Of a stretch of DNA of 64,000 bases, positions 528 to 54,202 are shown in pieces. The position numbers and the translations under genes were made by a program. This DNA comes from Ascidiella aspersa (lineage: Eukaryota). The notes beneath the pieces were generated by a model that was not told the DNA's origin, made no database searches, and saw nothing but the letters and a program-made list of their open reading frames with translations. How positions within the stretch are numbered: the stretch's first letter is position 1; every line of letters begins with the position of its first letter. The stretch covers positions 16,368,001 to 16,432,000 of the forward strand of contig OZ004615.1 of the NCBI GenBank assembly GCA_963924565.1. Reading direction: 5' to 3'.

Positions 528-680
528 AACCCGGCCGATTCGAGTTCAGCAAGTCCTCGTTCGTGTTCAAGACAAGCGGGGAAGTTGGAATGGTTCCTGT
601 GATTAGATCGGACGGAACTGACGGCGAAGTTTTCCTCAGTTGGCTCATCGAATCAGTCGGCGCCCCTTCGCCATTTGAGG
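528..680 (+). CDS. Exon 1 in window, Calx-beta N-half ([14 protein letters not shown]...)
   Basis: ttttcag acceptor, gtacgt donor, phase 1-1. Confidence 0.88.
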
Positions 681-33600: not shown

Positions 33601-36600
33601 AAGAGCTGCAGTTCCACTTGGAAATCGCAAACGACGACGACGGTGCGGATGATTGCAATGATGCGTCGTCGAAAATGCTGATCAAGTTGGATCCAACCGA
33701 CACTGAACCACCAGGAGAGGTAACATTGCCTGACGACGACGAGCTTGAAGTGAGTGCCTTAAGCTGCAACAGCCTTGGAATACCAATCAGACGCAAGAAG
33801 GGCCTGGGCGGGGAGGTCTCAGTGCGGGTTCGAACCCGCGACGGAACGGCCAAGGACGGGCTGCATTACACCGGCATCGACCAGCGAATCGTGCTCGACG
33901 ACCGCCAGGAGTTTTCGGAGGTTGTGGTGCCCCTGTTGTCGCTTCTATATCGCGACAGACTCAGTCTGGTTGTCGAGATTCTCGAGCCGGAAGGCGGCGT
34001 GACGTTGGGTGATGTGCAACACTCGTCGGTTACATTTCTACCGACCGATGACGAACCCACAGGTCAGTTGACGCTATGCGGCGATATGGACGGCGACGTC
34101 GTCGACGTGGACGCCACAACTACCAACATGGCCGTTGTGCCGGTTCGGCGCACTGGTGGAATGGGCGGGGGGGTATCCCTGCCTTATCGGACTAGGGACG
34201 GAACCGCCAAGAGCGGTACACATTACAAGGCAACCGATGGTGTTCTGACGTTAGGCGATCGCGAAACCGAAGGGAAGATATCGATTCCGCTTATCCCAGC
34301 CACGTACCGCGACCAACTTGAGTTCTACCTAGACACAGACGACGACAGCGGCGCCCAAGCTTGCGTATCCGTGCTTCTGCGGCCCACGGATAACAGTCCA
34401 AGGGGCGATCCCGCCTTCACGACAACAGACGGCGAGATAACTGTGGACCCCAAGAAAGTAGACCTCGTCGAAATACCCCTGAGCCGAGTTGGCGGTTTCG
34501 GCGGAGAACTCGACGTGACCGCGATTACTTGCGACGGCAGCGCCCTGGCCGACGTGCACTACAAGCCCCTGTACTCGGTCGTTACCTTTCCGGACGAAGA
34601 GACCGAATCTTCGATTTCTGTGCAACTGTTGGACGCCCAATACGACCAACCTTTGTGCTTCGAGGTGCACATAAACGGCGCCGACGAGCCTTCCGAGAAA
34701 CTGAAGAAGCTCAAAGTCAACCTGCTACCGACCGTGGTCGAGCCCCCGGGGCGTGTGATCGTCGATGCTTCATCGCCCGATGAAGGACTGAGGTTGGACA
34801 CCGAAGGACTTGACACGATATTTGTTCCGCTGACACGCGTAGAAGGGAGTGGCGGGGAAACACACGTCGATTACGAGACTAAGGATGGCAGCGCAAAGGC
34901 AGGTCAGCATTACGACCCCGTTCGGGGACGGGCAACGTTCGGTGACGGACAGGTCGAAACTGCAATCGACATCCCGCTCATATCTTGCTCGCGAACAGAG
35001 CCTCTTGATTTCACCATTGCTCTGCGCGGCGAAGACAACGATAACAATGACGGCGGTTATGAAGAGACGCGCGTCGTTCTGCTGCCCAACACTGAGCCCG
35101 AGAGCCACGACGTCGACGTTGACGCTACCTGCGTCGAAGCGTGCGTCTTGGACGACGGCGTCGCGCGCGTAACTGTGCGTCGCGGTGACGCAAAGTGCGC
35201 CAATGCCATCCCGATTTCGTACAAGACGAAGAACGGCAACGCCAAGGCAAGGAAGCATTATCAGGCGACGAGCGGGCGCGTCCAGATCCCATCGGGCGGC
35301 GATCAATGTTGCATCGAAATCCCGCTTAACAAACTCGACTACCGGCGCCCTGCCAACTTCTTTGTGCAGGTTAAGACGCAAACCAAAGTAGTGCGCGTTG
35401 TCGAGGTTGTTCTTCGTCCCACTGTGGAAGACCCGCCCGGCTTTCTCGAGTTCACGGCCCCTACTTTCGCGCACCCAGCTTTCACAAGCGACAGCGGCAA
35501 GCCGACCCTTTTGCTGCCGGTTGAGCGTACCGAGGGCACGGGCGGCGAGGTGTGCGTCGACTACTTCACACGCGACAACACAGCAATCAACGGGCAGCAT
35601 TACGAGGAAGCGAGCGGCGCGCTGACGTTCGGCGACGGCGAGTCACGCAAGGAGCTTGCCATCGAGCTGCTGCCATTCGACAACTACACGAAGGACGTGT
35701 CGTTCGTGGTCGAACTGGGGCTAGCGACCGGCGGCGCCGAGGTGGAAGGAAACTACGAGACGGAGGTGACTCTCCTGGCGCCGCTTGACGAAAACGACCC
35801 AGGTGTGCTTGGGTTCGAGTCGCAACGCACAGTTGTGTCCTCAACGCGGCTGCAGCGTGAATCAGACCGACCGGTTACAATCCAGATCCCAGTGAGGCGC
35901 ACACTCGGTTGTGGCGGCGACGTGAGTGTCGACTACTTCACGCGAGACAACACAGCCGTCGCCGGGCTCCATTACGCCGAGACTGAGGGCGAGCTTGCCT
36001 TTGCTGGTGGCGATGCCCGGCAACACATCGAGGTCGATTTGCTGCCAGGTGCGCACTTCGCCAAGCAGTGCTCTTTCACCGCGGAGCTGGGTGGTACGAC
36101 CGGAGACGCCGAAGTGGGACTCTACGAGACCGAGGTCGTACTGAACGCGCTTAAAAGGCGAGATTCGTCGAGCAGCTCCAGCAGTTCTTCGTCTTCCAGC
36201 TCCTCCGGTTCATCCGACAGTTCCTCGAACTCATCGGACGACGAGGGCGTTTTCAGGAAAAGTTCCCGATCAAAGCGGGTCCTTACCAAGACCAGCCAGA
36301 GGTCGGTGAAAGTGCTTCAGATGGAAGAGAGAACGACCACCACGACTTTTCAGACTATCGAGACCTTGGAAACCCAGTCGGCCTCGAGATCGGTCGTCGT
36401 ACAGCAACAAGAGCTCGACTTGGGTAAGATTAACAACATTGTCTGTTAAATGACCTTTATTTTGGTGGGGAACGAACGCTCGACAATGTACCTTTTCAAT
36501 TGCCTCTCTTCTTATTTGAATATGCCATTTAAGTTGCGGGACTTCACGTCAGCTTTTTTAAAATATTCCTTTTAAATCTAACTATCACAATCGGATGTAT

Positions 36601-39600
36601 AGAGAACGAAAAACCAGTAACCTATGTTGAAGTACGGCATTAAACAAAAATGATCCTCCTTAAAATATTACGCAGAACTGTAAAAATATATGGATAATTG
36701 TTTCAAAACGTTGCTACAATGCGCCCTACAACTGTAAAAGAGTTCAATATAAACTAATTTCTTCACGTTGTAAATCATGACTAACACAAACTTCGCAAGA
36801 CTATACAAGAAAATTGTGCATTCCTGAAATATTCAAATAACAAGGCCTTGTAATTGCCGATGAAATAAGTTATTTGAATTGCTAAATCATGGCTATCAGA
36901 AAATGGCAAGAAACAAATACCCAATCCCGACGTTTTTCGTGTGGGGCCTTTTAAATTGACCGGGGAATGAGGTATTTAAATTGCTGGGGTCGACTTTTAT
37001 AATAAAAGCGTTCGACTTTTATAATAAAAGCGTTCGCTTTTCCCGCAGGCGACGACACAGGAGGAGAAATCGGTTTCCCAGAGGAACAGCAGTCGGTTCG
37101 CGCCGGAGTGGACCGCGAGGCAGCCGTCACGGTCGCGCGCTCTTACGGGTTCAAGGGTCAGGTCACGGTCGACTGGTTTACGCGCGAAAACACGGCGGTC
37201 GAGGGCGTCGACTTCGTGCAGTGCGAGGGCCAGGTGACCTTCGCCCAAGGTCAAAAGATAGCCACTGTACACGTGCCGTTACTCGACGGAAGAGGAAATC
37301 GTGAGAGGGGCAGTTCATCCGAGAGGAGTTTTATCGTCGAAATGGGTGAACCAGATGGCGACGCCACCATGGGTCGGTATGAGACCAACGTGGTAGTGGT
37401 GGATCCTGATACGTCACAGTCCCCGCGGAAAGGTTTGCATATTTAAGCTTTTTGACAGGATACGTTGCACTGGTTACCAAGATTTAAAGTATATCGCCGA
37501 AACTTTGCCATTACGAATCGTTTTAGGTAGTGTTTGTGTTGCACAAGTGTGAATATAGTCCATAAATTAGAGTAACAATAAATACGCTGTAGCACAGGTC
37601 CTCTAAAACGATAAATACATTTTTTGTATACTTTTCTGTCTTTTATCCGCGGACACAACTGTGTCATAAAATACTATTTGGTGCTTGATTTATGTTTGGT
37701 ATTTGGTCTAAATTTACCACCTATAGGCTTTGGTGTCAGCGTTTATTTTATTCTTTCGTTAACATCGATTTTGTTTCGCAGGCAAACATCGAACCTTCGG
37801 CGGCAGAAAAACATGATTACCTGCTCGCCCTTTTTCACTAATTTTCAATATATATTTCTTACACTAACTCGAAATGTTCCTTAAATAGCTTACTAATCAA
37901 TATTCTTTTGTAGGATGTTTCTATATGAACTTTGTAATCTGTTCTCTACTTATATTTTCTTGCTTGCTTTACTAAGCATCTTTTCTTACAGCCTGTCCCC
38001 AGAAAGTCAACTTTATTTGAATACTTTGTCTAACTTTGAATGTAAAAAAAACTAACAGTTATATCGTCAGGGTAAACCTGGCTAAAAATCGGCATGTGAT
38101 GCCGTAACTCTAACTTGTTTGTCGTTTGTAACGCAAAGTTATTTAACATTCCGGGCTGCTTACAACAGACAAGTGACGTGACTTTACATATAACACTTGA
38201 CTGACGTGTATTGTTGCTCGCTCTTTCTGTTAACGACTCACACAAAATTCACGGCAAAAACACATTCTGAATCCCTGACTGGTGGTTGTCCCTGTTTCTC
38301 GATGGTGAGGTCTCTTCTACAATCTTGTTCCCGCTGTCGACTGGTATTTGTTGACTTATGTTTGTTTCAATTTATTATCGTCCGATAATATCTCGAAAAA
38401 TGGGTGTCTTGTATCTGTGTCTGGCATTGTCTTTTTACCGAGTCGGAAGCATTGTGGGTTAAATTTTCCAAGTTTTAAAGATCCATTGTTCTGGGTAAAA
38501 TGATACAAACGATTAAACATGTAAATATAAATTTAAACAGCTTTGAAGACATATCTTAGGACAATGTAGAAATCTTAAACACGTCTTTGACTATTTCAGC
38601 TCGCTTGGTGGCGCCCAAGAACGTGTCGGTTGACGTCACAGGAGCGACAAGCTTTAAGGTCAATTGGGAGCCGCAGGAAGCAACAGTTCACGAGTACTTG
38701 GTAGGTTAACGTTAGGGGTTTTGCAGTTACAAACGTTTTTTGCAGTAATAAAATCGAGTTCAAAATATGTTTTGCGTCATAACAGGACTACAACTAACGG
38801 TGTTTTTAAATTCATTGCTAATTCCGACAGCAAGTTACTGAGGATTCATATCTTAAAGCGTTTAGTGATTTTTAAACAGTTGGTGACATAGTTTGCTATT
38901 TAAATAGAAAACGTAATAACTCTTAATAAGAATATCAAAGCCCATACAGAAGTAGGTATCATTTTGAACGTTTCGAATAACTCTTATTATTGCAAAATTG
39001 TAATAAATTATCTTATTAAAATGTTTTAAATCGTGTTATACAAATAGGTCTGGTGCCAGTAAAAAGTACAAGCCGGCGTTCAAATGTTCATCAAACATGT
39101 CGCTGACAGTTCTTTCGCCCAAAATCGGAAACTATATAGAGCAGTCAGTTCAGTGAAATGGTACACACAACTAATAGGATGTATTCCGCATAAAAACGTT
39201 TCTATTTGCAAGCGTACATCAAATCCGTAACACTGTGTAGCCGATGACAAACTGAATGTGTAAAATATGAAGATATCTCCTCGCCCTTACACGTAAATGA
39301 CGACAATGGCTTCAAATGGGAGCAAATATTTTTTAGGCTTTCCCGTCAAAGTCAGTCATTAATAAGTTCTAGTCTTTTAAAGAATCATTCTATTTGAATA
39401 AGAGACTGATGATGCCTTATTTTGGGGCGAAATATATTTCTCTTTCAAAGGACTAGAACTTATTAATGACTGACTTTGACTAAGACCAAAGGAAAGTCTA
39501 AAAAAATTCACTGTGTAACCGCGTCGCTAATCGTTGCACAGGTTTCGTACAAACGAGCTGGAGACGCCGATGAACCTCACCGCTACACAGTGCCACCTAG

Positions 39601-42600
39601 CGATCACGAGTTCAAGGTCGACGGCCTTCTGCCCGAGTCGGCTTACGCGGTCGTGGTGTCAGCGCTGGGCGAAGGCGGCCAACAAGCGTCGAGCGATGTG
39701 ATCGGCTGCAAGACCCCTGGGAAAGGTAAATTACATAACTGTTTTCTACCAACCCGATGGTAGAAAAGCTGATCTTGCAATGCAGGATATTTGCAAGTTG
39801 TGAATACCAGACAATCCAGACATATTTTGTTTGTAATTCAAAATTTCTTAAAAGCGGCACAAGTTTTCTTAAGAACGCTTCTCTTAAAACCGTATTGTTT
39901 TATAAGCTTTTGAACACAAAAGTATATATTAACTATTTTATCGGCGAGTTCAACACATTTCATGAAACGATTATCTAATTTTTAAGCACATATGGCAGAG
40001 CCAAAGAAGTTGACATTCAGCAAGACCCTACAGTGTTAATTAAAACGATATATAAAGCGTCACTCTAGTTGCCCACGCTACGGTTTTTGTCGAAGAGTTT
40101 TTTTTTCGACAACGTTAGACCAAGATGCCAATTGTGTTTCAAACGCAGTTCCTGGACCTCCGAACAGACTTGCCTTCCAAGTACTATCCCCGACCTCGTT
40201 ACATTGCTCGTGGGGTGAACCTGCCGAAACGAACGGGCTTATCACCGGTTACGAAGTACTGTACAGGCCTTCTGGTAAGTGTACCTTTGGAAACATTTTT
40301 ATTATTGTAGGTGGTGTACAGGGAATTTCCTTTTTTGAGTATTGTTATATTACGTGCTTAGGAGATAATGAAACTCGGGATCTAGTAGACATAGCGGTGT
40401 AACCTACGTATTTCCAGGATCGCTCTACAAGCATATTGGAAGGCAGATTATTATTTTACAATAAGTTGTAATTCAGCTGAAGGCTCTGCACCTCTGTTAA
40501 ATATATATTGGTAAAAAAACTGAAGATGATATAAGCTCGTATTGAAATGTCTTAATAAAGATGATGTCGATCAACTCGACCTTATTGGGTTTGCAATTCA
40601 TTATCAAGCTACATTACAGATTCGTACAAAGTGTACCCAAATATTTGTTGGTGTAAAAAATTAATGTAAGGGTTCACCAAAAAACTGAAAAAAACAAATA
40701 ATGTTGTAGATCAAATAAAATAGTTCATTGAAACAACACAAGCTTCTTCACACATTTTCAGTCGGCATACTTCAACTAAATATGTCCTGTTTCGATTGCA
40801 ATAAAATTGCACGAAGCCTTGAGCCACCCTTGACAAACAAAACAACAAAAATACATGTAATCTTCCCAGACGACGACCCCAACAAAGACGAGCCGCCGAT
40901 CATGGTTCGCATCCCAGACGGACACTACCGCTCCTTGCTGGTGGAGGAGCTTCTTCCGGACACCTCGTACGTGTACAGCGTGCGCGCCCAGAACAGGGCC
41001 GGCACCGGGCCGCCCAGGGACGCCACCATGAAGATCGAGAGGGTCGGATCCCGGCCTCCTTCAGGTAATTATGCCGAACCGAGTTTTTGTGGTGTTTGTT
41101 TTATCAGTGCGTTAGCTTTAGTCATCAGTTTTTTTATGTTGGCATATAGGTTTTAATTTTCAAAGGTAAAGATGCAATGAAGTTTGTTTATAGTTATTGT
41201 GTTTTTGGTAAGCGCTGGTCAATTGTCGTTATTTGCCTGGATAAAGCGCTACCTTGATTATCACACTCTCAAAAACGTCGCAAATATAAAAAAAAATCAT
41301 TATGATCAGAATACGCCTCAAATGACTTCATCTAAATTAATAGGTTTAGAGCTTATGGTGAAACTAAATCTTACCTCATGCCTATTTGAGATTTTAAATT
41401 TTAAATGTAGCTTTGTATATGTAAACAATTAATTGAAGATTGTTAACTCACCCTAAACGACAAGCTTTTTGCGCAGCCATCTTTCTGGACGAGGAAAACA
41501 TGAAGGCAGTTCAGGAGCAAATCCGCTTGGAAGAAGCGGTGAGGCTTGCCAACCGAAGCATCAGCAGCAGCAGCGACGGACAGTCGCACGACGGGGGAAC
41601 CAAGGTATATCGAAATCTCTTGCAATGTCATTGTATCACAGGTTGCAGCTGAAATTCAAAACGCGTTGAAAGTGTAAAACAGTTGAAAGCTAAGTATCGA
41701 TAAGTTTTAGAATGGCTGAGAAAACAAACTTAAACCGCAGTGAACCACAGGTTATTTTACGTTCCTATTAAAAACTTGGAAGTTGTAGTATGTTTGACCT
41801 AATTTGTTTGGTGCACACCCGTATAAGTAGCTGCCGTATGTGTGTGTGTGGCAGGATACACTTCTTATATACTCGTCAATATACGCTAGTTAGTCTAGTT
41901 CAGCACTGTTTATAAATGAACTTGATATGCGGCTCACATTGTAAACACATTTCGGCTATGTGATTCTATATTTAGAAAAAAAATTTGCCGACAAAGTTTG
42001 TCAAAATAATTCGTCTAAAAGTTCAAGACGATTTTCAACACTTTAACGCTGTTGAGATCGAAACTTCAAAACAATATCTACAGTTTCTCATAAGGTTTTT
42101 TAATATTTTTGTATGGCAGATAACGACGACAGTTCGTCATGTCGTGCCACAACCGCAAAGTTCAAGCTCTGCGAGCAGCGCGACAAAGACAAGGGTTACG
42201 AGGTAGCTTTGTAATTTTGTGTGTTTATGCCAATTTTCAGGGTCTTGTATAGCTTGTTTTTATGGTTCGATTAGCTAGAAAAAATATATTTCATTTATTT
42301 ATTGAAGTGTTTTTGTTAAAGTCTAAAATAAAATCGGGTATCGCCACCATTTGATTTGTTCCGCAAAAATACAGCCAACAATCTAAACATTTTTGACAAC
42401 CTAAAAGTATAGTACTCCAAGTTCACCAAAAGCACTGGTATAAGTTTTAAAACTTTGCTGAAAGATTTTACGTCGTGCTTAATTTTTGTCGCCCAAAACC
42501 GCCCGAAAATCCATTAACTATTTCCTACATATAAACGCTGGCGTGTGTTACTGCGTTTCGCAGATACATTCACAAAACGGGACAACGGGAGCCGGAGGTT

Positions 42601-44790
42601 GAAACGGCGGAATATGACGGGAGATTGTCGCAAGAAGAACTGGCCAAGCTGGCAGAGGGGAGCCAACGAATCGAGGTAAGACAAAATGCGTCATCTTGCA
42701 TGCTAAATTACTCCCAAACGGCCCGGATCATTTCTAAAACAGGACTGACTACGCAAGATTGCAACTTTAGACTGGCGAAAACATTGCCACAAGTAAACTT
42801 TTCTCACTTCTTTTGACCTCGCTTTCTTTATGCATAACCAGTACCAAGGTACACTGTAAATCATTACCTATATTATATAAAGTATGAAAGTATGTGTTCA
42901 TAAATGACATATTCTAAAAACATACTATCTTGGGTCTATTAGATCGGGCCCAAAATATTTTCCATGCATTCCTATAATTTGCTTTTCGGTCTAATTTAAC
43001 TTTCCTAGCACTTTATTGACATTTCCCTTGTATCGATAAAATGCAAGCGTCTATACTTTCACTGTCGCATGTCTGCCTTTATTCTCGCTCCTTTTCACAT
43101 TTTCAACGCTTCACGCACTTCTTTTATTTCACAGTGCGCTTCGCCTCTTCAGGTAATATGCAACTCTATCTGGCTTGTTGATTCCTTGCTTTTTCTAATG
43201 ACGCATGTTTGATATTACAATGCTTTGCCATTTGCTCACATTTATATTTTCAACCTGGGATGATTGCATGGATTTATTACCGACTTACAACGTTCTATTT
43301 AAATGTCTGAAAAACAAAACATTGTTAATTTCTAAAAAGTGGAATAAAAAAAATATAAATAAAATAAATACCAGTATCGCAAACAAAAAATAAAAAAGCA
43401 AATGTTAATTTATTTTCCTGTTTGCGTGGTAAAGTGGTTTGATATTCGAATACAAATATAGATACCCTTAAAAGCTGTAAAAGTAAAAAAATAACATAGG
43501 AAGATAACACAATATTAACTTCAGGTTAAGCGAGCCAAAAATGTTTTTGTGTAAGTCATATATTAAAAGTAACTCGCGTGAATGTTTCATAATTATTACC
43601 ACGACAAATTTCCACTTTTCTCTGGTTAGTTGCTAAAAACCTGCGTGGTATTCGATAACTAAATCCTGTGGGAATTAATCAAACGGCTTACATATTTAAC
43701 AATGACACGACAAAATACTCCTGGCTATAAACTCATCTGGGGAAACTTTGTGACGTTTGCAATAGAAATACAGGATCAAGGTTGTGTGAGATTTAGCGCC
43801 GCGTAAACCCGGAAATTGCGGTTGTTAACTGAGGTCACTGGCGAGTGGAAAATCCAAGGCGAGCCGGTGTTTTGTTTGCCGCGGTCAGTTATAATTGCAG
43901 AGTAGAGAACTTCGACAATGGCCGGGTTTCGAACAACATATTGGCAGCTGCGCACAATAGTTTGATCTTGACTAAAACTGAGAGCATGTTGAATTGTTGA
44001 TATGTTTTGTTATAAGGATGAGGTGTACAAAATGTGCCTTTGTCGTTTTTGTGACATTTTAATGCAGTAAATAACCCATGATTGCTGAAAAAAACACAAG
44101 TATTTCTGTTTTGCGTAAATTTATTGACTGTCTCTTTGAGGTAATTCGGTAAATGATTTTGTTGCGTTTGTATATACTTTAGATTTTAGAACGATAAGGC
44201 CCGCATGATGAAATATCTTGTGCGACAAACATACAAAATGCCAACAGGGCATACTGCGTTTTACACTTATCTTCAATTAACATAGTAGGATGTAAAAAGT
44301 TATCGACGAGCAATATGAGTCAGTATGATTTGATTGCATGCAACACATCGCATGGCACTCGAACAGGTGCGAAATGTTGACGCTCGTGCAGCTTCCGATG
44401 TTCGTCCTATATACACAAAACTACCGCATAATAGAAACACACCTACATATTCCGCCTCAAGTATTTTCCCGATTTTCGTAGGTCATAACTAATTTATTAT
44501 TTTGCGTTTAGGTGCAAGTGATCTCGTACAACACTTCCAGTAGCGGCTCGAGCATTCCGAGCGGTTACCAGCAGCAGACGCAAATAACCAGCACCGACGG
44601 GGGTTCCCCTGTGATGACGCAACAGCAGCAACAACAGTATCAGCAGCAAGAGGGGCAACCGGGCGGCAACTTCACGTCGTCTTACTCCGCCTACCCCCAG
44701 GAATACGTCAACACTGACGTCAGGAGTGACGTTTCACAGGACACGGCGGTCTATACCGACGTGCAGGAAGAAAAGGACGGGGATGTGGAT
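528..44790 (+). CDS. Giant multi-exon gene (partial at both ends): ~41 Calx-beta repeats + 4 FN3 domains; C-terminal module resembles the integrin beta-4 cytoplasmic tail
   Basis: 48 exons joined by hand at AG/GT sites (one GC donor). All intron phases match and the reading frame stays open for ~5,590 codons. Repeated Calx-beta motif (G.i.F....; V.V.R..G..G.V.V.W/Y.T.DGTA..G.HY....G.L.F..GE..K.I.I.L) and FN3 motifs (W..P...GY.V; L.P.T.Y...V...N..G.G). Confidence 0.92.
1095..1262 (+). CDS. Exon, Calx-beta C-half ([18 protein letters not shown]...)
   Basis: ctag acceptor, gtaggg donor, open frame. Confidence 0.88.
1960..2124 (+). CDS. Exon, Calx-beta N-half (...[14 protein letters not shown])
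   Basis: tttccacag acceptor, gtggga donor. Confidence 0.88.
2445..2806. mobile_element. Non-autonomous hAT-type MITE with internal (GTAATT)n arrays
   Basis: TIR CAGAGTTGGATCAATT...AATTGATCCAACTCTG; perfect 8-bp TSD GTTCTACC (2437-2444 and 2807-2814). Confidence 0.85.
2843..3013 (+). CDS. Exon, Calx-beta C-half ([18 protein letters not shown]...)
   Basis: tttctccag acceptor, gtgagt donor. Confidence 0.88.
3558..3596 (+). CDS. Candidate 39-nt cassette mini-exon ([13 protein letters not shown])
   Basis: tacacag acceptor, cag|gtatta donor, phase 1-1, no stop; GCATG cluster downstream. Confidence 0.55.
4110..4320 (+). repeat. Intronic tandem duplication (~120-bp unit, 2 copies)
   Basis: GATAAAGTAATCAATA...AATTGTACATTCAGTTATTTTCGCCTAATTA occurs twice. 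Confidence 0.75.
4471..4749 (+). CDS. Exon, degenerate Calx-beta N-half with Ser-rich insert
   Basis: tttttccag acceptor, gtaagt donor; ORF 4473-4778. Confidence 0.88.
5206..5370 (+). CDS. Exon, Calx-beta C-half ([15 protein letters not shown]...)
   Basis: cacag acceptor, gtgaga donor. Confidence 0.88.
6007..6147 (+). CDS. Exon, Calx-beta N-half ([14 protein letters not shown]...)
   Basis: ctcag acceptor, gtaaga donor. Confidence 0.88.
6691..6891 (+). CDS. Exon, Calx-beta C-half; ends at a GC donor
   Basis: gtgtag acceptor; AG|GCGAGT donor gives the phase needed by the next exon. Confidence 0.82.
7038..7309. mobile_element. hAT/Charlie-like MITE
   Basis: Ends CAGTGTTTCTCAACC...GGTTGAAAAACACTG; no TSD detectable. 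Confidence 0.65.
7521..7724 (+). CDS. Exon, Calx-beta ([11 protein letters not shown]...)
   Basis: ttcaacag acceptor, gtttgt donor. Confidence 0.88.
8002..8139 (+). CDS. Exon, Calx-beta C-part
   Basis: gcgcag acceptor, gtaagt donor. Confidence 0.87.
8596..8714 (+). CDS. Exon, Calx-beta N-part ([13 protein letters not shown]...)
   Basis: tttcag acceptor, gtaagt donor, phase 1-0. Confidence 0.87.
9090..9223 (+). CDS. Exon, Calx-beta middle ([15 protein letters not shown])
   Basis: AAG acceptor, gtagtt donor, phase 0-2. Confidence 0.8.
9483..9691 (+). CDS. Exon spanning a Calx-beta repeat junction
   Basis: ttttttcag acceptor, gtttgt donor, phase 2-1. Confidence 0.87.
9815..10080. mobile_element. 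hAT/Charlie-like MITE
   Basis: CAGGGTTTCTTAACC...GGTTAAGAATCACTG; 8-bp TSD TTTTAGAT on both sides. Confidence 0.8.
10242..10451 (+). CDS. Exon, Calx-beta C-half ([19 protein letters not shown]...)
   Basis: ccgcag acceptor, gtattt donor. Confidence 0.88.
11028..11224 (+). CDS. Exon, Calx-beta N-half
   Basis: caccag acceptor, gtgagt donor, phase 1-0. Confidence 0.87.
11571..11732. repeat. Foldback repeat family B (other copies ~8245-8330, ~20304-20434, ~40518-40612)
   Basis: Shared GATAATGAATTGCAAA...TCGAGTAGATCGACATCATCTTGATTA motif; palindromic at 11571 and 20304. Confidence 0.75.
11892..12057 (+). CDS. Exon, Calx-beta C-half ([16 protein letters not shown])
   Basis: ctacag acceptor, gtaagt donor. 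Confidence 0.88.
12523..12721 (+). CDS. Exon, Calx-beta (...[10 protein letters not shown]...)
   Basis: tttttttag acceptor, gtttgc donor, phase 1-2. Confidence 0.88.
13260..13396 (+). CDS. Exon, Calx-beta C-part
   Basis: atttcag acceptor, gtaaaa donor. Confidence 0.87.
14048..14104 (+). CDS. 57-nt linker mini-exon ([19 protein letters not shown]), candidate cassette
   Basis: cctgcag acceptor, gtaagt donor, phase 1-1. Confidence 0.7.
15210..15361 (+). CDS. Exon, Calx-beta N-half
   Basis: ccacag acceptor, gtaagt donor. Confidence 0.87.
15714..15814 (+). CDS. Exon, Calx-beta middle ([16 protein letters not shown])
   Basis: ttcgcag acceptor, gtaaga donor. Confidence 0.86.
16146..16321 (+). 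CDS. Exon spanning a Calx-beta repeat junction
   Basis: ttgcag acceptor, gtagga donor. Confidence 0.87.
16800..17236. mobile_element. hAT/Charlie-like MITE (degenerate)
   Basis: CAGTGTTTCGCAACC left end, repeated GCGGCACCC subterminal motifs, right end GGTGAGAACCACAG; partial TSD TTCTA. Confidence 0.55.
17276..17515 (+). CDS. Exon, Calx-beta C-part
   Basis: tcgcag acceptor, gtaagt donor. Confidence 0.88.
18031..18192 (+). CDS. Exon, Calx-beta N-half
   Basis: ttctcag acceptor, gtaata donor. Confidence 0.87.
18261..18431. repeat. Foldback repeat family A (other copies ~12866-13010 and half copy ~38927-38986)
   Basis: TAAGAATATCAAAGC.CATACAGAAGTAGG.ATCATTT arms in inverted orientation; found three times in the window. 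Confidence 0.75.
18733..18906 (+). CDS. Exon, Calx-beta C-half
   Basis: ccccag acceptor, gtacgt donor. Confidence 0.87.
19549..19716 (+). CDS. Exon, Calx-beta N-half
   Basis: AAG acceptor after a pyrimidine tract, gtaaaa donor. Confidence 0.82.
20083..20250 (+). CDS. Exon, Calx-beta C-half ([20 protein letters not shown])
   Basis: gtgcag acceptor, gtaagt donor. Confidence 0.88.
20674..20834 (+). CDS. Exon, FN3 domain A, N-half
   Basis: PPNVVSDF...SW.....[10 protein letters not shown]; cacag acceptor, gtaaaa donor. Confidence 0.88.
21243..21363 (+). CDS. Exon, FN3 domain A, C-half
   Basis: [26 protein letters not shown] (FN3 tyrosine-corner motif). Confidence 0.9.
21807..21993 (+). CDS. 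Exon, degenerate Calx-beta N-half + Ser-rich insert
   Basis: ggcag acceptor, gtgagt donor, phase 1-2. Confidence 0.85.
22663..22946 (+). CDS. Exon, Ser-rich insert + degenerate Calx-beta C-half
   Basis: cgtag acceptor, gtgaga donor, phase 2-1. Confidence 0.85.
23419..23544 (+). CDS. Exon, FN3 domain B, N-half
   Basis: PGRVRKP...[17 protein letters not shown]. Confidence 0.88.
23986..24141 (+). CDS. Exon, FN3 domain B, C-half
   Basis: [22 protein letters not shown]. Confidence 0.88.
24553..24882. mobile_element. hAT-like MITE
   Basis: 8-bp TSD CCCTATAG (24545-24552 and 24883-24890); right end GTTTAAAACCCCTG. Confidence 0.7.
24966..25144 (+). CDS. Exon, Calx-beta N-half + Ser/Asp insert
   Basis: ccgcag acceptor, gtaagt donor, phase 1-0. 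Confidence 0.87.
25154..25601. mobile_element. Nested PIF/Harbinger-like MITEs
   Basis: GGCCCGTTTACACTACAGCTG at 25154 and 25267, inverted copy ending ~25501; outer arms 25177-25246 vs 25533-25601; TAA upstream of 25154. Confidence 0.7.
25729..25924 (+). CDS. Exon, Calx-beta C-half
   Basis: ccgcag acceptor, gtatga donor. Confidence 0.85.
26219..26575 (+). CDS. Exon encoding one complete Calx-beta domain
   Basis: ttttcag acceptor, gtgagg donor, 357 nt, phase 1-1. Confidence 0.87.
27613..36423 (+). CDS. Giant 8,811-nt exon: 24 tandem Calx-beta repeats + poly-Ser and Thr/Gln-rich tail
   Basis: Coding part of ORF 27426-36449; ttttattttcag acceptor, gtaaga donor; ~115-aa repeats with T.DGTA..G.HY and F.DGET.K.I.I.L. 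Confidence 0.93.
28272..31621 (+). repeat. Near-identical internal duplication within the giant exon (28272-29449 vs 30441-31621)
   Basis: Long DNA-level identity with an offset of 2169-2172 nt. Confidence 0.9.
37049..37432 (+). CDS. Exon encoding the last Calx-beta domain (integrin beta-4-like position)
   Basis: cccgcag acceptor, gtttgc donor; [26 protein letters not shown]. Confidence 0.9.
38600..38700 (+). CDS. Exon, FN3 domain C, N-half (like beta-4 FnIII-1)
   Basis: [23 protein letters not shown]; tttcag acceptor, gtaggt donor. Confidence 0.88.
39345..39480. repeat. Inverted repeat with ~33-bp arms (MITE-like)
   Basis: GTCAAAGTCAGTCATTAATAAGTTCTAGTC...GACTAGAACTTATTAATGACTGACTTTGAC. 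Confidence 0.75.
39542..39725 (+). CDS. Exon, FN3 domain C, C-half
   Basis: [21 protein letters not shown]...VIGCKT. Confidence 0.88.
40149..40274 (+). CDS. Exon, FN3 domain D, N-half (like beta-4 FnIII-2)
   Basis: [39 protein letters not shown]. Confidence 0.9.
40870..41064 (+). CDS. Exon, FN3 domain D, C-half
   Basis: [33 protein letters not shown]...RPPS. Confidence 0.9.
41477..41604 (+). CDS. Exon, linker after the FN3 pair (connecting-segment-like)
   Basis: gcgcag acceptor, gtatat donor, phase 1-0. Confidence 0.8.
42120..42202 (+). CDS. Exon, Thr/Ser-rich linker
   Basis: ggcag acceptor, gtagct donor, phase 0-2. Confidence 0.75.
42564..42675 (+). CDS. Exon, linker
   Basis: ttcgcag acceptor, gtaaga donor, phase 2-0. 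Confidence 0.8.
43135..43152 (+). CDS. Candidate 18-nt microexon (CASPLQ)
   Basis: Long pyrimidine tract + cacag acceptor, cag|gtaata donor; phase 0-0 matches both neighbours. Confidence 0.6.
44512..44790 (+). CDS. Last exon found in window: Ser/Gln/Tyr-rich low-complexity segment
   Basis: cgtttag acceptor, strong gtaagt donor; ORF 44512-44817. Confidence 0.82.
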
Positions 44791-47700
44791 GTAAGTTCAA
44801 AAGTGTTTTTTCTGTAATAGTAGTTTCAGTTGAATACAAGGGGTGACTTAATTAAAAGTCAAATTCGTGAACTCCGTCATAACATATTCCTCAAAGGATT
44901 GATAAGAAAAATGTGAAGTTTATGTAACTGTTTTACATATTTTTTCAACGATAGTAAACAACATCCCTCAAACTAAACATTTTAACATGTTTGACTGGAC
45001 AATTTATTGTCAAACAAACCTATAGAAATAGGAGTTCAACTTAGCCATATAGACAGGAGGTGGCCTAGTACGGTTACTGTGTGCTCGGCAGCGCAAGTAA
45101 ATTCGATTTCCCACAATTAAAAGCGTCCAAGATCCACGCGATTCATCATTCCAAAACGCGGCTCCCTTCTAGCTCATCGTGAAAACGCACAGCGGCGGCC
45201 CCACGCGCTATAAAGAGCAGTCCTTACACGTCTCTGTATTAGTGATGTCACCGCACCGAAAAACATTGTTTGCGGTTCGCGCAAAAGTTATGCCCGCTAT
45301 TTTAGGCAGCGTCAGCGAGCGATTTCAACACATAGCTCCACACCTTCCCTTTGGTGAAACCGCAACTAGCGCTTTGAAGAATCGGGCCTCCCAAAGATTC
45401 GGGCCTTTTAATACCGATCTGTGCCACTGGTGATTATTAGGATCCTTTTAAAAAAACGGTACCGGCGATTATCGGGCATTGCTGGAGTGGCGTTCTTGCG
45501 CAAATATTCGTTTTCGGTTGTATTGGAACTGAAAATGGCCAAATATGGGGTCGTCCAATCGCGAGAAAAATCACTTGCAGATCAAACTGAGCGGGGCAGG
45601 TGCATAATTAATGTTGTTGTGATTGGCCTCTAAGCACCGTTGACATAATTCGTTTCTCTATGGTTGCATATCGTATGACAGGGGTGTAATGTCCGTCTTA
45701 ACGAACGATATGAGTTCAAATAGCGAAATATCCAACTAAACAACTAATATTAAATTCTGTTTAAACGTATTTATGATAAAAGATAATTATTTCCCCGACG
45801 CTTTTCCAAACAAAGCTATGAACAATTTCCAAATTGATTACCTATTTTAATTTGCCATCGAATCGTATCGTGTATTGTTTTTATTTTAACCCGGTATTAC
45901 TGTTTCGATATTTAAAGGGTAATGAAATTAATTAATAGTGACACAGGTTATGAGCAATTCCTCCCTTCCATTTTCCATACTATCGTAGTCTTTGAATTTG
46001 AACTCAAGACGTGTCAATTTATAAATAGTTATGGATAGCCCGAGTAACAGCAAATTAATTAGCGCTGACCCGCCCCAATTTCGTGACGCTTTCGCTACAC
46101 CCCGCAAAGCCCGCCCAGGCACTGCGGCTACCTACCGCGATGACTTTTGCATAGCAACGCTATCGCTGGTCGACATATTTATTCTGTGGCCACCAGCTAT
46201 ATCCGCCTTTCCACGACAGAAGGATCGGCATACGTAGGAAGTCACAATTAAGTGCCGCAATCGAAATGATTTGGTGTGCTGTGTGCTTAATGATAGGGAA
46301 GGTGAAAGTCCGATTCCTGTCCAGCACCTTCGATTTGCTTATTGCGAGTTTGCGTTGTGACGATGCACTTTTGCGAGGCATTTCAATGCAAACCGCTTAT
46401 TCTGGCGAGCCCAAGTGGTTGTGTCAGAATTAGGCTTTGATCGAAGGACTGATTTTTTTTCTCGCGAGTATTCGCGTTGCACTTTTTCTGCTTTTAAGCC
46501 ACTGGCCGCCTTAAACGAACATCAATTATACGCATTTTGGAATCTTAAGTGTCGGTTGACAAAGTTGTTTAATTGCCAAACGAGGCAACGGCCGTAGATT
46601 ACTGGATTTGCATTTCCTGGTCTTAAACTAATATGCCGAATATGTGGGCTGCTTGATTGGGAAAAGTTTTAAAGGATTTAAAAGTGATAAACAACATCCG
46701 ATAAAAATATCCGCTTATTTAAAGTAACAATGCTATTTCTTTTTAGTTTTGTTTTGTTCGGCAAGAGACTATGTTTAAAGCATGTTACATCACTAATCCA
46801 ATCCTAAATTTTCGATTGCGTTATTCTTGTGACGTTGCAGTGTACCCCAATGTCAAATTTTGTCAGTCGTTAATTTTGTTGGAGCTTATGTCAAATTTCG
46901 TCAGTCGTTTATTTTAATTAGAACATTTAACTGTTAATTTGTCTTTTTCAAAATGAAAAAACGCAAAACTTGTGTGGTCAAAACTTGCCGGGGGTCTTCA
47001 CTAATGTGATGCAATGCCTCGTTTTAAAAAAAAGTATTTCGTTCTTTGAAAAGAAAATTTTGTTTATAAAGGAAAAATTTAACAAAGCGTTAATACCAAC
47101 GGGAACATCTTTCAAAGCATCTGTTATCTTCGCTTGGTAATTGCGTAATTCGCCGCAATGATGTTGAAATGGCTGGTGTTTGTAAAAAGATGTTGACAAA
47201 GCCGAATTGAATGTCAAAGTTTCATAACAGCTCGTCCGGGTTCGGCTCGACATTTGTCCCAATTTTAGAATCTTTTGTTTGGCGAGTTTTTGTCGTAATG
47301 TCTTACCTAAAGTCCAAAGGTCGTTCTTGAAGGTTGTACGTTTGCACGCACACGGGTATTACACGATAACAAAATTTTAGGTAAACCTGTAACGTTCCAG
47401 TTATCATAAAATTGATTTACTTCTAATCAAACAAGAATATTCCTGATATTGTTGGAACAGGCGCTCAGACGATTCACTTTTGATTGATCAAACGTTTAAT
47501 AACAGGTTACGACAATCACCAAGACTTACCGAACGACCACGACGGAACGAAGGTTGGAGACCACCTCGGGAATGAAAACGGTACTGCTCACCGAAGACGG
47601 GCAGCAGATTGAAAATCAAAGGCACCAGCAGCAGTAACTGCTTGCGATTGGCACGGCTACAAAGGCCGCCAAACCACGCTGGACACAACAACCTGGCCGC

Positions 47701-52231: not shown

Positions 52232-52789
52232 CTAAAAAGATAACCGCATTTGTAAGAGCGTCGGGCCAATACCAAGGAACTTTTCGCGTTCGTCATTCGT
52301 GTGGCTTTATTGGGTTTGCGAAATTAAAACAATAAAACAAAGCCTTCCCTGTTTGCACCCAAAACCGTTATGCAGCTGGTGAAGGTTCAGTTTATTATGT
52401 GTTTAAAACGTTATGTTTAAACATGAGGCCTTTTATGTGAAGGCAGCATGAGTTATAGTCTGCGCGACCAAACCCCAGCCAGCTATTATTTTGAAACAAA
52501 GTTTTGGGTATATACACTAACCCTGGCCTTTTCTGTTAGTAAGTGTAACAAGCGGCTAAATTTTAAGCTAACTATTGTATTTACACGCAACACAACCTCT
52601 TGTATATCGTTTTCACCAAAGAAAAGGTAACTTAGTTTTGCATAAAGAAGCCCTGCTGGAAATGTTTGTAATGGTAACAACCCGGGGGATGCTACGAGAT
52701 CGCTTATCGCCTAGAGAAGCTTTACGCACCAATTCGGTCGCTTTGCATGAAATCGAGTTAAAACAAAGAAACCGCAACGGACCACCAAC

Positions 52790-54202
52790 CTTATGACAGC
52801 GGACGCAGTGTGACATCGTTTGCTTCGCAACACTAGCAGGAATCAGAGTGGAGAGCGCTCGAATGCATTTCGGGTCTTTCGATTCAAGTTTATCCTTCAG
52901 CATGCGTTTGAGGTCCTTGGCACTGCAGCCGTCCAGAAACTGGTCGAGGCGGACGGCGTCGTTGGTCAGAGACTCGACCTTGGGCGTTGGGCTGACGGAT
53001 GAGTTTGTTTCGGCTGTGGAGAGCGACTCGGTTTCGCTGCGATCATTGACGCTGAGCGAGCTGAGATCTCCAATGACCCGCGAGCTTTTGGTTGACCGAG
53101 ATGGTTTCGGAAAAAACTGAGGCTCTTCGACCCTCAGGGGACTTGGCTTTACGTAATGGGTGTGAAAGCCCGCGTGCTCGCCCAGAAAGAGTTCATCCGC
53201 CAAAGGATCGACAGGAGGAATATCAAACTGGTCTGCGCCGGTGACGTAGTCGGATACAGCCGGGCCCTTTACGGGTGTGAAGATGTTGGAGCTGCTGATG
53301 TCGGAAAGGTCGCTACCGCTTGTCAGGCGCTGCTTTCGGGGAATCACCGGGGTGAATGCCGACTTACGGGATCCATCGCTCGAGACCAGAGGCGATGGGG
53401 TCTTATGCTCGGATGGGTAAACTGCCGGAACCCGGATGGGGCTGACCTGGGAGCTGTGTGAGTGAAACTTGGTCGGGCTTCCGAAGGTGAAGCTCGCCGA
53501 GTCTTCAAGCGGCGTGTCAGGGGTCATCTGGATGCGGGGAACTTGAAGAGTCCTGGGCTTCTTCAGGATGCCTCTCTTGGCGGAGGCGGACGACTCCGTT
53601 TCGCTCACATCCGCGTCCGACTGGGAGGTCTTCCGCCACTTGGCATTCTCGTAGTCGGACTTATTAATGTTGCTGGAGAGGTGCAGCGGGTCGTAGTAGG
53701 ACTGACGCCCGTAACTGTCACCGACATAGTAGTAAGAGTTGGAAGACTCTTCGCCGTACTTCAACACGGGAGAAGTAGGAGACGGCGTCATGGACACAGT
53801 CGAAGGCGCGAAGGTCTCGGTGTAGCCTTGCGTCTGCTGGGCGTAGCCCCTCTGCTGGTGAATCGCCTCGTCATAGCTCGAAACACTCGAGGACGCGCCC
53901 TTCCTTTGCTTGAACTGCTGTCGCTTGTTGGCGGCATCCGGCGTGCTTGCGTAAATCTGGAACGCCTTGTCCGATGTCATACTCTTGAGCGGCGAGTTGG
54001 CGCCGTCGTCGCTGGACGCAGTGGTCGAGTAGCCGCTTTCGCACACGTCGTTGTTGAAGGTGACCTTGCGTTGCTCGAGTGACGTCTGGCTGCTGTGCCA
54101 GCGGGGCTGCTTTCCGTTCTGCGAGGATTGCTGGCTGATCAGGTGGTTAATCATTACTTGACGGTCTCGCAAATTGCCGTGCATCACTATACTGATATTG
54201 GC
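52790..54202 (-). CDS. Antisense gene, large exon: Ser/Pro-rich disordered region + start of Cys/His domain (HCVRCHK); first ATG at 54184
   Basis: ORF 52613-54187; - strand acceptor tttttttcaacag at 54203, donor aag|gttggt at 52789; GC-rich coding-like composition. Confidence 0.85.

What the first reader, a model, noticed from the sequence alone, without database searches (positions are those of the whole stretch)
37049..44790. Integrin beta-4 cytoplasmic-tail module at the end of a giant Calx-beta protein
Seen: after ~40 Calx-beta repeats the gene encodes Calx-beta, FN3, FN3, then a Ser/Thr/Gln/Tyr-rich linker. Established: this order (Calx-beta, FnIII-1, FnIII-2, connecting segment, then FnIII-3/4) is the signature of the integrin beta-4 tail that nucleates hemidesmosomes. 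The similarity goes beyond generic FN3: [39 protein letters not shown] versus human beta-4 (recalled from memory) [39 protein letters not shown], and [33 protein letters not shown] versus [33 protein letters not shown]. Inference: this is either a beta integrin with a hugely expanded cytoplasmic tail, or a stand-alone giant cytolinker related to the donor of the beta-4 tail. Either would point to an invertebrate hemidesmosome-like anchoring system.
Basis: partly seen in the sequence, partly recalled or inferred. Interest (0 to 1): 0.92.

Follow-up and report, generated by a model that had tools for sequence, protein, structure and literature searches.

The report
Sea-squirt integrin beta-4 with giant tail
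These exons are the C-terminal end of a sea-squirt counterpart of vertebrate integrin beta-4, whose intracellular tail has grown from one Calx-beta domain to about 46, so the core of the hemidesmosome integrin tail is older than vertebrates.

Summary
GT-AG exons with consistent reading phase at 37049-44790 encode one Calx-beta domain, two FN3 domains and a Ser/Thr/Gln-rich linker.

One coding exon was missed. It lies at 47506-47637 and ends in TAA, so there is no second FN3 pair downstream.

The gene is not a stand-alone cytolinker. On the same strand, 15-29 kb upstream of the window, lie integrin-beta ectodomain exons and a transmembrane exon. The first Calx-like exon follows about 0.7 kb later.

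The whole 76-kb locus is collinear, exon by exon, with one Styela clava RefSeq protein of 4606 aa that is named only "uncharacterized". A 3'-truncated Ciona model is misnamed "GPR98-like".

The second FN3 is specifically like beta-4 FnIII-2:
- 27/40 identical residues to lamprey beta-4 over exon 5.
- Best single-domain hit in PDB, and best non-ascidian hit among the 150 proteins returned from a 1.84-billion-protein library.
- Reciprocal best hit when lamprey beta-4 is searched against this genome.
- Groups with FnIII-2 in a tree, with moderate support.

The tail holds about 46 Calx-beta domains, 23 of them in one 8.8-kb exon that is a lineage-specific expansion.

A hemidesmosome-like function is an inference only. 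I rate this a new variant of a known kind. No RNA evidence could be obtained.

The parts
528..26575 (+). In-window part of the Calx-beta array encoded by small exons. There are 14 domains split over two exons each, plus one whole-domain exon at 26219-26575. The array begins about 14.5 kb upstream of the window.
   Evidence: Profile hits; exon-by-exon collinearity with Styela residues 1828-3760; ORF translations.
20673..21371 (+). Internal FN3 domain M1, in two exons (20673-20831 and 21243-21371). It is FnIII-1-like.
   Evidence: phmmer to Styela 3329-3425. The Styela and Ciona M1 domains fall in a starred clade with beta-4 FnIII-1, support 96/86.
23415..24149 (+). Internal FN3 domain M2, in two exons (23415-23546 and 24018-24149).
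   Evidence: phmmer to Styela 3544-3641; same clade as M1.
27613..36423 (+). Giant exon of 8811 nt (2937 codons, phase 1-1). It encodes 23 Calx-beta domains plus poly-Ser and Thr-rich inserts, and is a lineage-specific expansion.
   Evidence: Open frame; borders; Pfam Calx-beta 642 bits in 20 stretches; 23 profile hits; maps repeatedly onto only Styela residues 3766-4045.
37049..37432 (+). Last Calx-beta domain, the one that directly precedes the FN3 pair as in beta-4.
   Evidence: Pfam PF03160 E=1.3e-11. Styela 4063-4173, 83 bits. The beta-4 Calx-beta structure 3FQ4 aligns full length at 28.4 bits, but NCX1 CBD2 scores higher at 35.1.
38600..39725 (+). FN3-a, in two exons (38600-38700 and 39542-39725). 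It occupies the FnIII-1 position.
   Evidence: Pfam fn3 halves; Styela 4181-4273. No beta-4-specific hit in PDB. The Styela orthologue's domain groups with FnIII-1 in the tree, but on a long branch.
40149..41064 (+). FN3-b, in two exons (40149-40274 and 40870-41064). It is the counterpart of beta-4 FnIII-2 and runs into the first residues of the connecting segment.
   Evidence: PDB 1QG3 38.3 bits. Lamprey beta-4 27/40 and 23/53 identical, fish 24/40 and 26/63. Per-domain ranking. Genome-wide reciprocal hit at 64% identity.
41477..44790 (+). Four linker exons (41477-41604, 42120-42202, 42564-42675, 44512-44790). They are Ser/Thr/Gln/Tyr-rich and predicted to be disordered.
   Evidence: Splice sites and phases read; no Pfam hit; exon 9 matches Styela 4463-4499 at 32 bits and exon 10 matches 4500-4572.
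47506..47637 (+). Terminal coding exon (43 codons plus TAA) with a Thr-rich C-terminal motif.
   Evidence: Acceptor AG at 47504-47505 and phase 0, matching the end of the previous exon. 19/29 identical to the last 34 residues of the Styela protein.

Best explanation
The finding is the C-terminal end of the ascidian orthologue of vertebrate integrin beta-4. The gene spans about 76 kb (G000:C9:16339.3-16415.6 kb, + strand).

It encodes, in order:
- a normal integrin beta ectodomain (PSI, beta-I domain with a DxSxS MIDAS motif, and I-EGF repeats);
- one transmembrane helix with the beta-4-type Cys-rich CCW(R/K)CC juxtamembrane motif;
- a cytoplasmic tail of roughly 6,500 residues.

The tail is a chain of about 46 Calx-beta domains, interrupted by two FnIII-1-like FN3 domains. 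It ends in Calx-beta, FN3-a, FN3-b, a roughly 240-residue disordered linker and a Thr-rich C-terminus.

What is shown: the domain order, the cytoplasmic topology, orthology to beta-4, and lineage-specific expansion of the Calx-beta array.

What is inferred: the tail acts as a long, rod-like spacer of beta-sandwich domains. It would hold a beta-4-type docking site at a distance from the membrane, so that a laminin-binding integrin is tied to a plakin and intermediate filaments. The docking site would be FN3-b, with both arginines that in human beta-4 contact the plectin actin-binding domain, plus the first residues of the connecting segment.

The FnIII-3,4 pair that binds BP230 and BP180 in vertebrates is absent. 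Any such junction would therefore be a simpler, plectin-only type.
For: One gene with an integrin ectodomain.
- PF00362 exons lie at C9:16343116-16345455, best hit 115.6 bits. [quoted passage not shown]
- The transmembrane exon and the first Calx-like exon are about 0.7 kb apart on the same strand.
- 72 successive matches run in order along Styela XP_077973499.1 from residue 34 to residue 4602. That protein carries Integrin_beta, PSI, I-EGF, Calx-beta and four fn3 domains.
- A Ciona model of 4045 aa has the same head and array.
- An ORF from another ascidian reads straight from the FN3-a half into the FN3-b half, with the Val predicted at our splice junction.

Affinity to beta-4.
- Exon 5 versus PDB: beta-4 FnIII-2 is the best single domain, 38.3 bits.
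- Among the top 150 proteins from a 1.84e9-protein library, the best non-ascidian single-domain scores are lamprey beta-4 at 46.0 and fish integrin beta-4 at 38.5, against 29.0 for the best sidekick-like protein. Exon 6 gives 34.1/31.1/28.7 against 20.1.
- The whole Styela FN_b domain scores 72/66 bits to FnIII-2, 52/47 to FnIII-4 and at most 45 to sidekick-type domains.
- Trees: FN_b groups with FnIII-2 at 97/73 in the first tree, together with one long-branch usherin-like domain, and at 89/67 once that domain is removed. FN_a, M1, M2 and FnIII-1 form a clade at 96/86.
- Lamprey beta-4 searched against this genome hits this gene's beta-I exon best (111 bits, 57% identity; other beta genes at most 43 bits per exon) and exon 5 best among all FN3.
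- The juxtamembrane CCW(K/R)xC motif is shared with lamprey and fish beta-4.
- Ewan et al. 2005 (PMC1145181) placed one Ciona beta chain as the beta-4 orthologue and saw Calx-like ORFs 3' of it.

Possible partners. Several plakin-repeat loci exist in this genome.
Against:
- That all exons sit in one transcript therefore rests on splice phase, on collinearity with a predicted Styela RefSeq model, and on the absence of any intervening gene.
- The giant exon is frame-symmetric and could be skipped in some isoforms.
- FN3-a and the last Calx-beta domain are not beta-4-specific in sequence searches.
- The FN_b plus FnIII-2 clade has only moderate support.
- The representative search shows only the top 150 proteins by summed score, so the per-domain ranking is incomplete.
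- No beta-ectodomain tree including beta-1 and beta-3 type chains was built here.
- The functional part (plakin binding, filament anchorage) is untested. FnIII-3,4 and most of the connecting segment are missing.
Confidence: 0.87

Rival explanations
1. There are two genes. An ordinary integrin beta gene ends shortly after its transmembrane exon. A separate stand-alone giant Calx-beta/FN3 cytolinker starts downstream.
For: No transcript evidence from this species. The Ciona model is named and delimited differently and lacks the last module. Ewan et al. 2005 could not join the parts.
Against: The first Calx-like exon lies about 0.7 kb after the transmembrane exon on the same strand. RefSeq models from two ascidians join the ectodomain to the array. 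The locus is collinear with one Styela protein throughout. The juxtamembrane exon has no in-frame end of the kind conventional beta tails have.
Confidence: 0.05
2. The beta-4 likeness of the FN3 pair is generic FN3 similarity or convergence. On this view the tail was assembled independently in ascidians from Calx-beta and FN3 modules.
For: FN3-a and the last Calx-beta domain give no beta-4-specific hit. Exon 6 also matches beta-4 FnIII-3 and contactins at similar scores in PDB. Support for the FN_b plus FnIII-2 clade is moderate.
Against: Exon 5 is 60-68% identical to beta-4 FnIII-2 and outscores every other FN3 seen by about 10-17 bits. Both halves hit the same beta-4 domain in collinear positions. 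The reciprocal best hit holds. No other integrin class has Calx-beta plus FN3 in its tail, and the ectodomain and juxtamembrane motif point independently to beta-4 (PMC1145181).
Confidence: 0.04
3. The gene is real, but the full roughly 7,200-residue form is rare. The usual product would skip the frame-symmetric giant exon, or end early, and would be closer to the 4,000-4,600-residue Styela and Ciona models.
For: The giant exon is exactly 2937 codons with phase 1 on both sides. It corresponds to only about 300 residues in Styela. Styela has several isoforms of 4184-4613 aa.
Against: An uninterrupted 8.8-kb open frame with 23 recognisable Calx-beta domains implies selection on the coding sequence. 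This reading is compatible with the main explanation rather than a true alternative to it.
Confidence: 0.2

Closest known systems
Vertebrate integrin beta-4 (ITGB4), the hemidesmosome integrin subunit. Structures: 1QG3 and 3F7P (FnIII-1,2), 3FQ4 (Calx-beta), 6GVK (FnIII-3,4).
   Same: - Integrin beta ectodomain and a single transmembrane helix with a CCW(K/R)xC motif.
- A cytoplasmic Calx-beta domain directly followed by a tandem FN3 pair, then a disordered segment.
- The second FN3 is 60-68% identical over its first half to FnIII-2, including the two arginines at the positions of the human plectin-contact residues. The residue numbers R1225 and R1281 are from my own knowledge of the literature.
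- Reciprocal best hits at both ends of the protein.
   Different: - About 46 Calx-beta domains instead of one.
- The long segment between the membrane and the Calx-beta domain in vertebrates is replaced by an array that starts about 50 residues after the helix.
- Two additional FnIII-1-like FN3 domains sit inside the array.
- There is no FnIII-3,4 pair and no recognisable BP230/BP180-binding region.
- It keeps an Asp-Arg-Glu juxtamembrane motif like that of conventional beta chains.
- Estimated size is about 7,200 residues against about 1,800.
Ciona intestinalis Ci_beta5 (Ewan et al. 2005, PMC1145181) and the RefSeq models from Styela clava (LOC120348632, 'uncharacterized') and Ciona ('G-protein coupled receptor 98-like')
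   Same: These are the same gene in other ascidians. The ectodomain exon is 77-79% identical, the transmembrane exon is 54/65 identical to Ciona, and the exon order is collinear throughout.
   Different: - The 2005 paper could not determine the tail.
- The database models are unnamed or misnamed.
- The Ciona model stops before the last Calx-FN3-FN3 module.
- This species has a further roughly 2,600 residues from the expanded giant exon.
Na+/Ca2+ exchanger NCX1, cytoplasmic CBD1/CBD2 Calx-beta domains
   Same: These are cytoplasmic Calx-beta domains, and they give the best PDB score for the last Calx-beta domain (35.1 bits).
   Different: NCX has two regulatory Ca2+-sensing domains in a transporter loop. 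Here the domains form a long tandem array. Many giant-exon repeats appear, by eye, to lack the acidic cluster; this was not quantified.
ADGRV1 (VLGR1/GPR98) and FRAS1/FREM proteins, giant Calx-beta arrays
   Same: Dozens of tandem Calx-beta domains in one polypeptide. This likeness is why the Ciona model was named after GPR98.
   Different: Those arrays are extracellular and are attached to a 7TM/GAIN module or to CSPG repeats. Here the array lies C-terminal to a type-I integrin transmembrane helix, so it is cytoplasmic. No 7TM family appears in the Pfam lists of the Styela or Ciona proteins.

Membership tests
Integrin beta-4 (ITGB4) lineage | Integrin beta ectodomain with a beta-I domain and MIDAS motif, a PSI domain and I-EGF repeats | tested here: met
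   PF00362 exons on the same strand upstream, best hit 115.6 bits. A DxSxS motif is seen in the exon at C9:16343062-16343217, and Cys-rich EGF-like exons follow. The beta-I exon scores about 83 bits to solved beta-1/2/3 chains.
Integrin beta-4 (ITGB4) lineage | Single transmembrane helix followed by the beta-4-type cysteine-rich juxtamembrane cluster | tested here: met
   The transmembrane exon at C9:16352485-16352865 carries CCWRCC, and aligns to lamprey and fish beta-4 CWKCC and CCWKYC. That these cysteines are palmitoylated in human beta-4 is from my own knowledge, not tested here.
Integrin beta-4 (ITGB4) lineage | Calx-beta domain in the cytoplasmic tail | tested here: met
   Pfam PF03160 on exon 37049-37432 and on the giant exon; about 46 domains by a gene-specific profile. 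All of them lie C-terminal to the transmembrane helix.
Integrin beta-4 (ITGB4) lineage | Tandem FnIII-1,2 pair directly after a Calx-beta domain, with a second domain specifically related to FnIII-2 | tested here: met
   Domain order. FnIII-2 specificity. The link between the first domain and FnIII-1 is weak and rests on the tree.
Integrin beta-4 (ITGB4) lineage | Connecting segment followed by a second pair, FnIII-3,4, and a C-tail (the canonical vertebrate architecture) | tested here: not met
   No FN3-like open segment was found on the + strand between 44800 and 52700. The coding sequence ends at 47637, and the Styela protein ends likewise about 230 residues after FN_b. I therefore file this as a beta-4-lineage orthologue with a divergent tail, not as a protein with the canonical ITGB4 architecture.
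Integrin beta-4 (ITGB4) lineage | Reciprocal best hit with vertebrate ITGB4 | tested here: met
   Forward search. Reverse search, lamprey beta-4 against the whole genome: the best matches are this gene's beta-I exon and exon 5. A full beta-chain phylogeny was not built here; for Ciona it was done by Ewan et al. 2005.
Integrin beta-4 (ITGB4) lineage | Binds the plectin actin-binding domain and nucleates hemidesmosomes; pairs with a laminin-binding alpha subunit | not testable with these tools
   Only indirect evidence exists. Arginines align with the two human plectin-contact arginines, and plakin-repeat genes are present in the genome.
ADGRV1/GPR98-type adhesion GPCR (the name given to the Ciona model) | Extracellular Calx-beta array attached to a GAIN domain and 7TM module | tested here: not met
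   The precomputed and scanned Pfam lists of the Styela and Ciona proteins show Integrin_beta, PSI, I-EGF, Calx-beta and fn3, with no 7tm_2 or GPS family. The array follows an integrin transmembrane helix.

The most novel reading that the evidence does not exclude
The ascidian beta-4 tail may be a cytoplasmic rod or spring of about 46 Calx-beta domains. At about 4-4.5 nm per domain (a figure from my own knowledge) it could reach roughly 200 nm if extended. It would place a plectin-type docking site deep in the cell, possibly with Ca2+-dependent stiffening through the repeats that keep acidic clusters. That would be a new way of building a cell-matrix junction, and a natural experiment on what the single Calx-beta domain of human beta-4 does. 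Its size would be tuned species by species through exon expansion (24 domains in Styela, about 46 here).
Probability: 0.15. Interest if true: 0.8.

Novelty: new variant of a known kind. Interest (0 to 1): 0.6.

Why it matters
Integrin beta-4 is the only integrin that ties epithelia to intermediate filaments, and mutations in it cause junctional epidermolysis bullosa. The origin of its unique tail is not settled. The 2005 Ciona integrin survey could not tell whether the ascidian orthologue had an extended tail.

This locus, with the Styela model, settles part of that question:
- The Calx-beta, FnIII-1, FnIII-2 core and the start of the connecting segment predate the tunicate-vertebrate split.
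- The FnIII-3,4 pair is either a vertebrate addition or an ascidian loss.
- Ascidians expanded the Calx-beta module about 25- to 45-fold.

The finding also gives a tractable system (Ciona, Styela) for asking what a cytoplasmic Calx-beta domain does. It flags two database models that are unnamed or misnamed.

Tried and rejected
- Joined protein. Every search used single exons by reference, or database proteins from Styela, Ciona, lamprey and fish.
- Representative search. The search with exon 5 ranks by summed score, so titin-, twitchin- and usherin-like multi-FN3 proteins fill the top of the list. I re-ranked by best single domain.
- P0084. This protein first grouped with Styela FN_b on a long branch. 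It is an usherin-like protein and was removed from the second tree.
- Tail-specific search. A search for giant homologues with the Styela C-terminal module found only Styela isoforms.
- PDB and the ectodomain. PDB cannot resolve beta-4 orthology of the ectodomain, because beta-1/2/3/6/7/8 all score alike and no beta-4 ectodomain chain appeared.
- Tandem Repeats Finder found no DNA-level tandem array in the giant exon, so the repeats are diverged.
- C-terminus. Likeness of the Thr-rich C-terminus to the lamprey beta-4 C-terminus was noted by eye, but no alignment supports it.
- Literature. Searches found no description of the giant ascidian tail.
- Complex prediction was not used, because no ascidian plakin N-terminus was available as an unspliced sequence.
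Full report
WHAT IS IN THE SEQUENCE

The region holds a chain of short exons with canonical AG/GT borders, and their phases link into one reading frame.
- An 8811-nt exon at 27613-36423. It is exactly 2937 codons, with phase 1 on both sides.
- 37049-37432.
- 38600-38700 and 39542-39725.
- 40149-40274 and 40870-41064.
- 41477-41604, 42120-42202, 42564-42675 and 44512-44790.

Scanned exon by exon against Pfam:
- 37049-37432 is a complete Calx-beta domain (E=1.3e-11).
- The next four exons are the two halves of two FN3 domains.
- The rest has no family and is rich in Ser, Thr, Gln and Tyr.

The observation therefore stands.

All searches used single exons by reference, or proteins already in public databases.

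THE GENE GOES FURTHER IN BOTH DIRECTIONS

Downstream, one more coding exon lies at 47506-47637. It has an acceptor AG at 47504-47505, is in phase 0 like the end of the preceding exon, and has 43 codons followed by TAA. No FN3-like open segment exists on the + strand between 44800 and 52700.

The window is G000:C9:16368001-16432000. Upstream, on the same strand, I found:
- Integrin_beta (PF00362) exons at C9:16343116-16345455, best hit 115.6 bits;
- Cys-rich EGF-like exons;
- a transmembrane exon at C9:16352485-16352865;
- the first Calx-like exon about 0.7 kb further on, at C9:16353471-16353725;
- further Calx-beta exons from C9:16355829 onward.

Because the array follows the transmembrane helix of a type-I receptor, it is cytoplasmic.

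COMPARATIVE SUPPORT FOR ONE GENE

The best database match of the giant exon is Styela clava XP_077973499.1, "uncharacterized protein LOC120348632", 4606 aa. By Pfam and by inspection it has:
- a signal sequence, PSI domain, Integrin_beta (residues 160-408) and I-EGF;
- a transmembrane helix at 762-784;
- many Calx-beta domains;
- four fn3 domains, at 3329-3423, 3552-3640, 4181-4273 and 4276-4379.

Laying that protein on all open segments of the 124 kb I held gives 72 successive matches in strict order outside the giant exon. They run from Styela residue 34 (C9:16339298) to residue 4602 (window 47595).

The giant exon maps again and again onto only Styela residues 3766-4045. It is therefore an expansion specific to this lineage.

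A search for every integrin beta longer than 2533 aa among 5.8 billion protein clusters returned only Styela and one Ciona intestinalis model of 4045 aa, named "G-protein coupled receptor 98-like". The Ciona model has the same head, an identical transmembrane helix and the same array, but stops before the last module.

An ORF from another ascidian assembly (P0211) reads directly from the second half of FN3-a into the first half of FN3-b, with the Val that I predicted at the splice junction.

A profile built from this gene counts 46 Calx-beta domains here: 7 upstream of the window, 15 in small exons inside it, 23 in the giant exon, and the last one. The same profile counts 24 in Styela. By adding exon lengths, not by assembly, I estimate a protein of about 7,200 residues.

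IS IT BETA-4?

Evidence for FN3-b:
- Exon 5 aligns to PDB 1QG3 (integrin beta-4 FnIII-1,2) at chain residues 95-132 with 38.3 bits and i-E 6.7e-9. That is the best single-domain hit in the PDB.
- Exon 6 hits beta-4 FnIII-3 and FnIII-2 and contactins at similar levels.
- A search of 1.84 billion representatives with exon 5 is dominated by multi-FN3 giants because scores are summed.
- Re-ranked by best single domain, the order is: the ascidian fragment at 71.9, Styela at 55.5, lamprey at 46.0, fish "integrin beta-4" at 38.5, a sturgeon fragment at 34.5, then sidekick-like proteins at 29.0 or less. The lamprey protein has Integrin_beta, one Calx-beta and four fn3.
- Exon 6 picks the same three vertebrate proteins at collinear positions, 34.1/31.1/28.7 against 20.1 for the next.
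- Identities are 27/40 (lamprey) and 24/40 (fish) for exon 5, and 23/53 and 26/63 for exon 6. The exon 6 alignment runs into the first residues after FnIII-2.
- The whole FN_b domain of the Styela orthologue scores 72/66 bits to FnIII-2, 52/47 to FnIII-4 and at most 45 to sidekick-type domains.

Trees of 48-52 FN3 domains:
- FN_b groups with beta-4 FnIII-2. Support is 97/73 in the first tree, where the group also holds one long-branch usherin-like domain, and 89/67 after that domain is removed.
- FN_a, the two internal FN3 domains of Styela and Ciona, and beta-4 FnIII-1 form a well-supported clade (96/86).
- FnIII-3 and FnIII-4 form their own clade, with no ascidian member.

In the reverse direction, lamprey beta-4 searched against this whole genome finds two best matches. 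One is this gene's beta-I exon (111 bits, 57% identity; exons of the four other beta genes reach at most 43 bits). The other, among all FN3 in the genome, is exon 5 at 64% identity.

The juxtamembrane motif CCW(R/K)CC is shared with lamprey and fish beta-4.

Ewan et al. 2005 placed one of five Ciona beta chains as the beta-4 orthologue. They could not establish its tail, and noted Calx-like ORFs 3' of it (PMC1145181). This genome also has five integrin-beta loci.

Weaker points: FN3-a and the last Calx-beta domain give no beta-4-specific signal in sequence searches. The best hits are fibronectin and PTPRD for FN3-a, and NCX1 CBD2 for the Calx-beta domain.

HOW IT PROBABLY WORKS

Shown:
- It is an integrin beta subunit.
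- Its cytoplasmic tail is a long chain of beta-sandwich domains ending in the beta-4 core (Calx-beta, FnIII-1-like, FnIII-2-like, start of the connecting segment).

Inferred:
- The FnIII-2-like domain keeps an arginine at each of the two positions that contact the plectin actin-binding domain in human beta-4 (alignments). The residue numbers and their role come from my own knowledge of the literature.
- The genome has several plakin-repeat loci.
- The most likely role is therefore to couple a laminin-type integrin to a plakin and intermediate filaments, with the Calx-beta chain acting as a spacer.
- Because FnIII-3,4 is missing, the vertebrate BP230 and BP180 contacts cannot be made in the same way.

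I put about 0.87 on the identity and architecture, and about 0.35-0.4 on the plakin-anchoring function.

RIVALS

- Two separate genes: about 0.05. This is contradicted by the spacing, the shared strand, the collinearity and two RefSeq models.
- Generic or convergent FN3 likeness: about 0.04. This is contradicted by the score gap, the reciprocal hits and the independent ectodomain and juxtamembrane signals.
- A shorter usual isoform that skips the frame-symmetric giant exon: about 0.2. This is compatible with the main reading.

NOVELTY

The gene exists as predicted models in two ascidians, one unnamed and one misnamed. A 2005 paper hinted at it. My five full-text searches found no description of the giant tail.

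I rate it a new variant of a known kind: the beta-4 lineage with a 25- to 45-fold expanded Calx-beta module and no FnIII-3,4.

That the genome is an ascidian comes from an earlier scan note. The closest homologues found here, Styela and Ciona, agree with it: 77-79% identity in the beta-I exon and 54/65 in the transmembrane exon.

LIMITS

- The per-domain ranking covers only the 150 listed representatives and the PDB.
- No full beta-chain tree was built.
- The FN3 trees rest on about 100 columns.

Noticed in passing
window 27613-36423: G+C rises to 54-59% in the 3' third of the giant exon (32-36 kb), against 35-44% in the flanks. The exon contains two long, closely similar blocks (for example the units beginning ERG-I/T-IS-I) plus poly-Ser runs, which suggests recent internal duplication. 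Tandem Repeats Finder sees no DNA-level array.
   Followed up: partly
Outside the window: G000:C9:16352662-16352859 (L002:4662-4859): The juxtamembrane segment combines the beta-4-type CCW(R/K)CC cysteine cluster with an Asp-Arg-Glu-Glu-x-Lys-x-Tyr stretch. By eye that stretch resembles the HDR(R/K)EFAKF membrane-proximal motif of conventional beta chains, which vertebrate beta-4 has lost. No NPxY motif is seen before the first Calx-like exon.
   Followed up: partly
Database protein P0243 (Ciona intestinalis, 4045 aa): This RefSeq/UniRef model is named 'G-protein coupled receptor 98-like', but it carries Integrin_beta, PSI, I-EGF, a transmembrane helix identical to this gene's, Calx-beta and fn3. 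It looks like a misnamed and 3'-truncated model of the beta-4 orthologue.
   Followed up: partly
Outside the window: G000:C9:16363349-16363982 (L005:5349-5982), an intron of the same gene: A minisatellite with a 21-nt unit. It reads as about 25 copies of a 7-residue unit in two frames of the + strand and lies between Calx-beta exons.
   Followed up: no
window 52613-54187 (- strand): A 524-codon open frame on the opposite strand encodes a Ser/Pro-rich, probably disordered protein with a Cys/His cluster near its end. It marks the next gene, so the integrin gene must end before about 50 kb.
   Followed up: no
window 47506-47637, and the C-termini of P0001 and P0190: The C-terminus is Thr-rich (V-T-T-I-T-K-T...) and nearly identical in Styela. 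Lamprey beta-4 ends in a similar V-T-T-V-T-K-T-T-K stretch. This was seen by eye only; no alignment tool reported it.
   Followed up: partly
G000:C9:7591764-7608745: A very large FN3-rich open frame (open frames of up to 5899 codons) elsewhere on the same contig appeared as a weaker match to the lamprey beta-4 FN3 region. It may be a titin- or twitchin-like giant.
   Followed up: no
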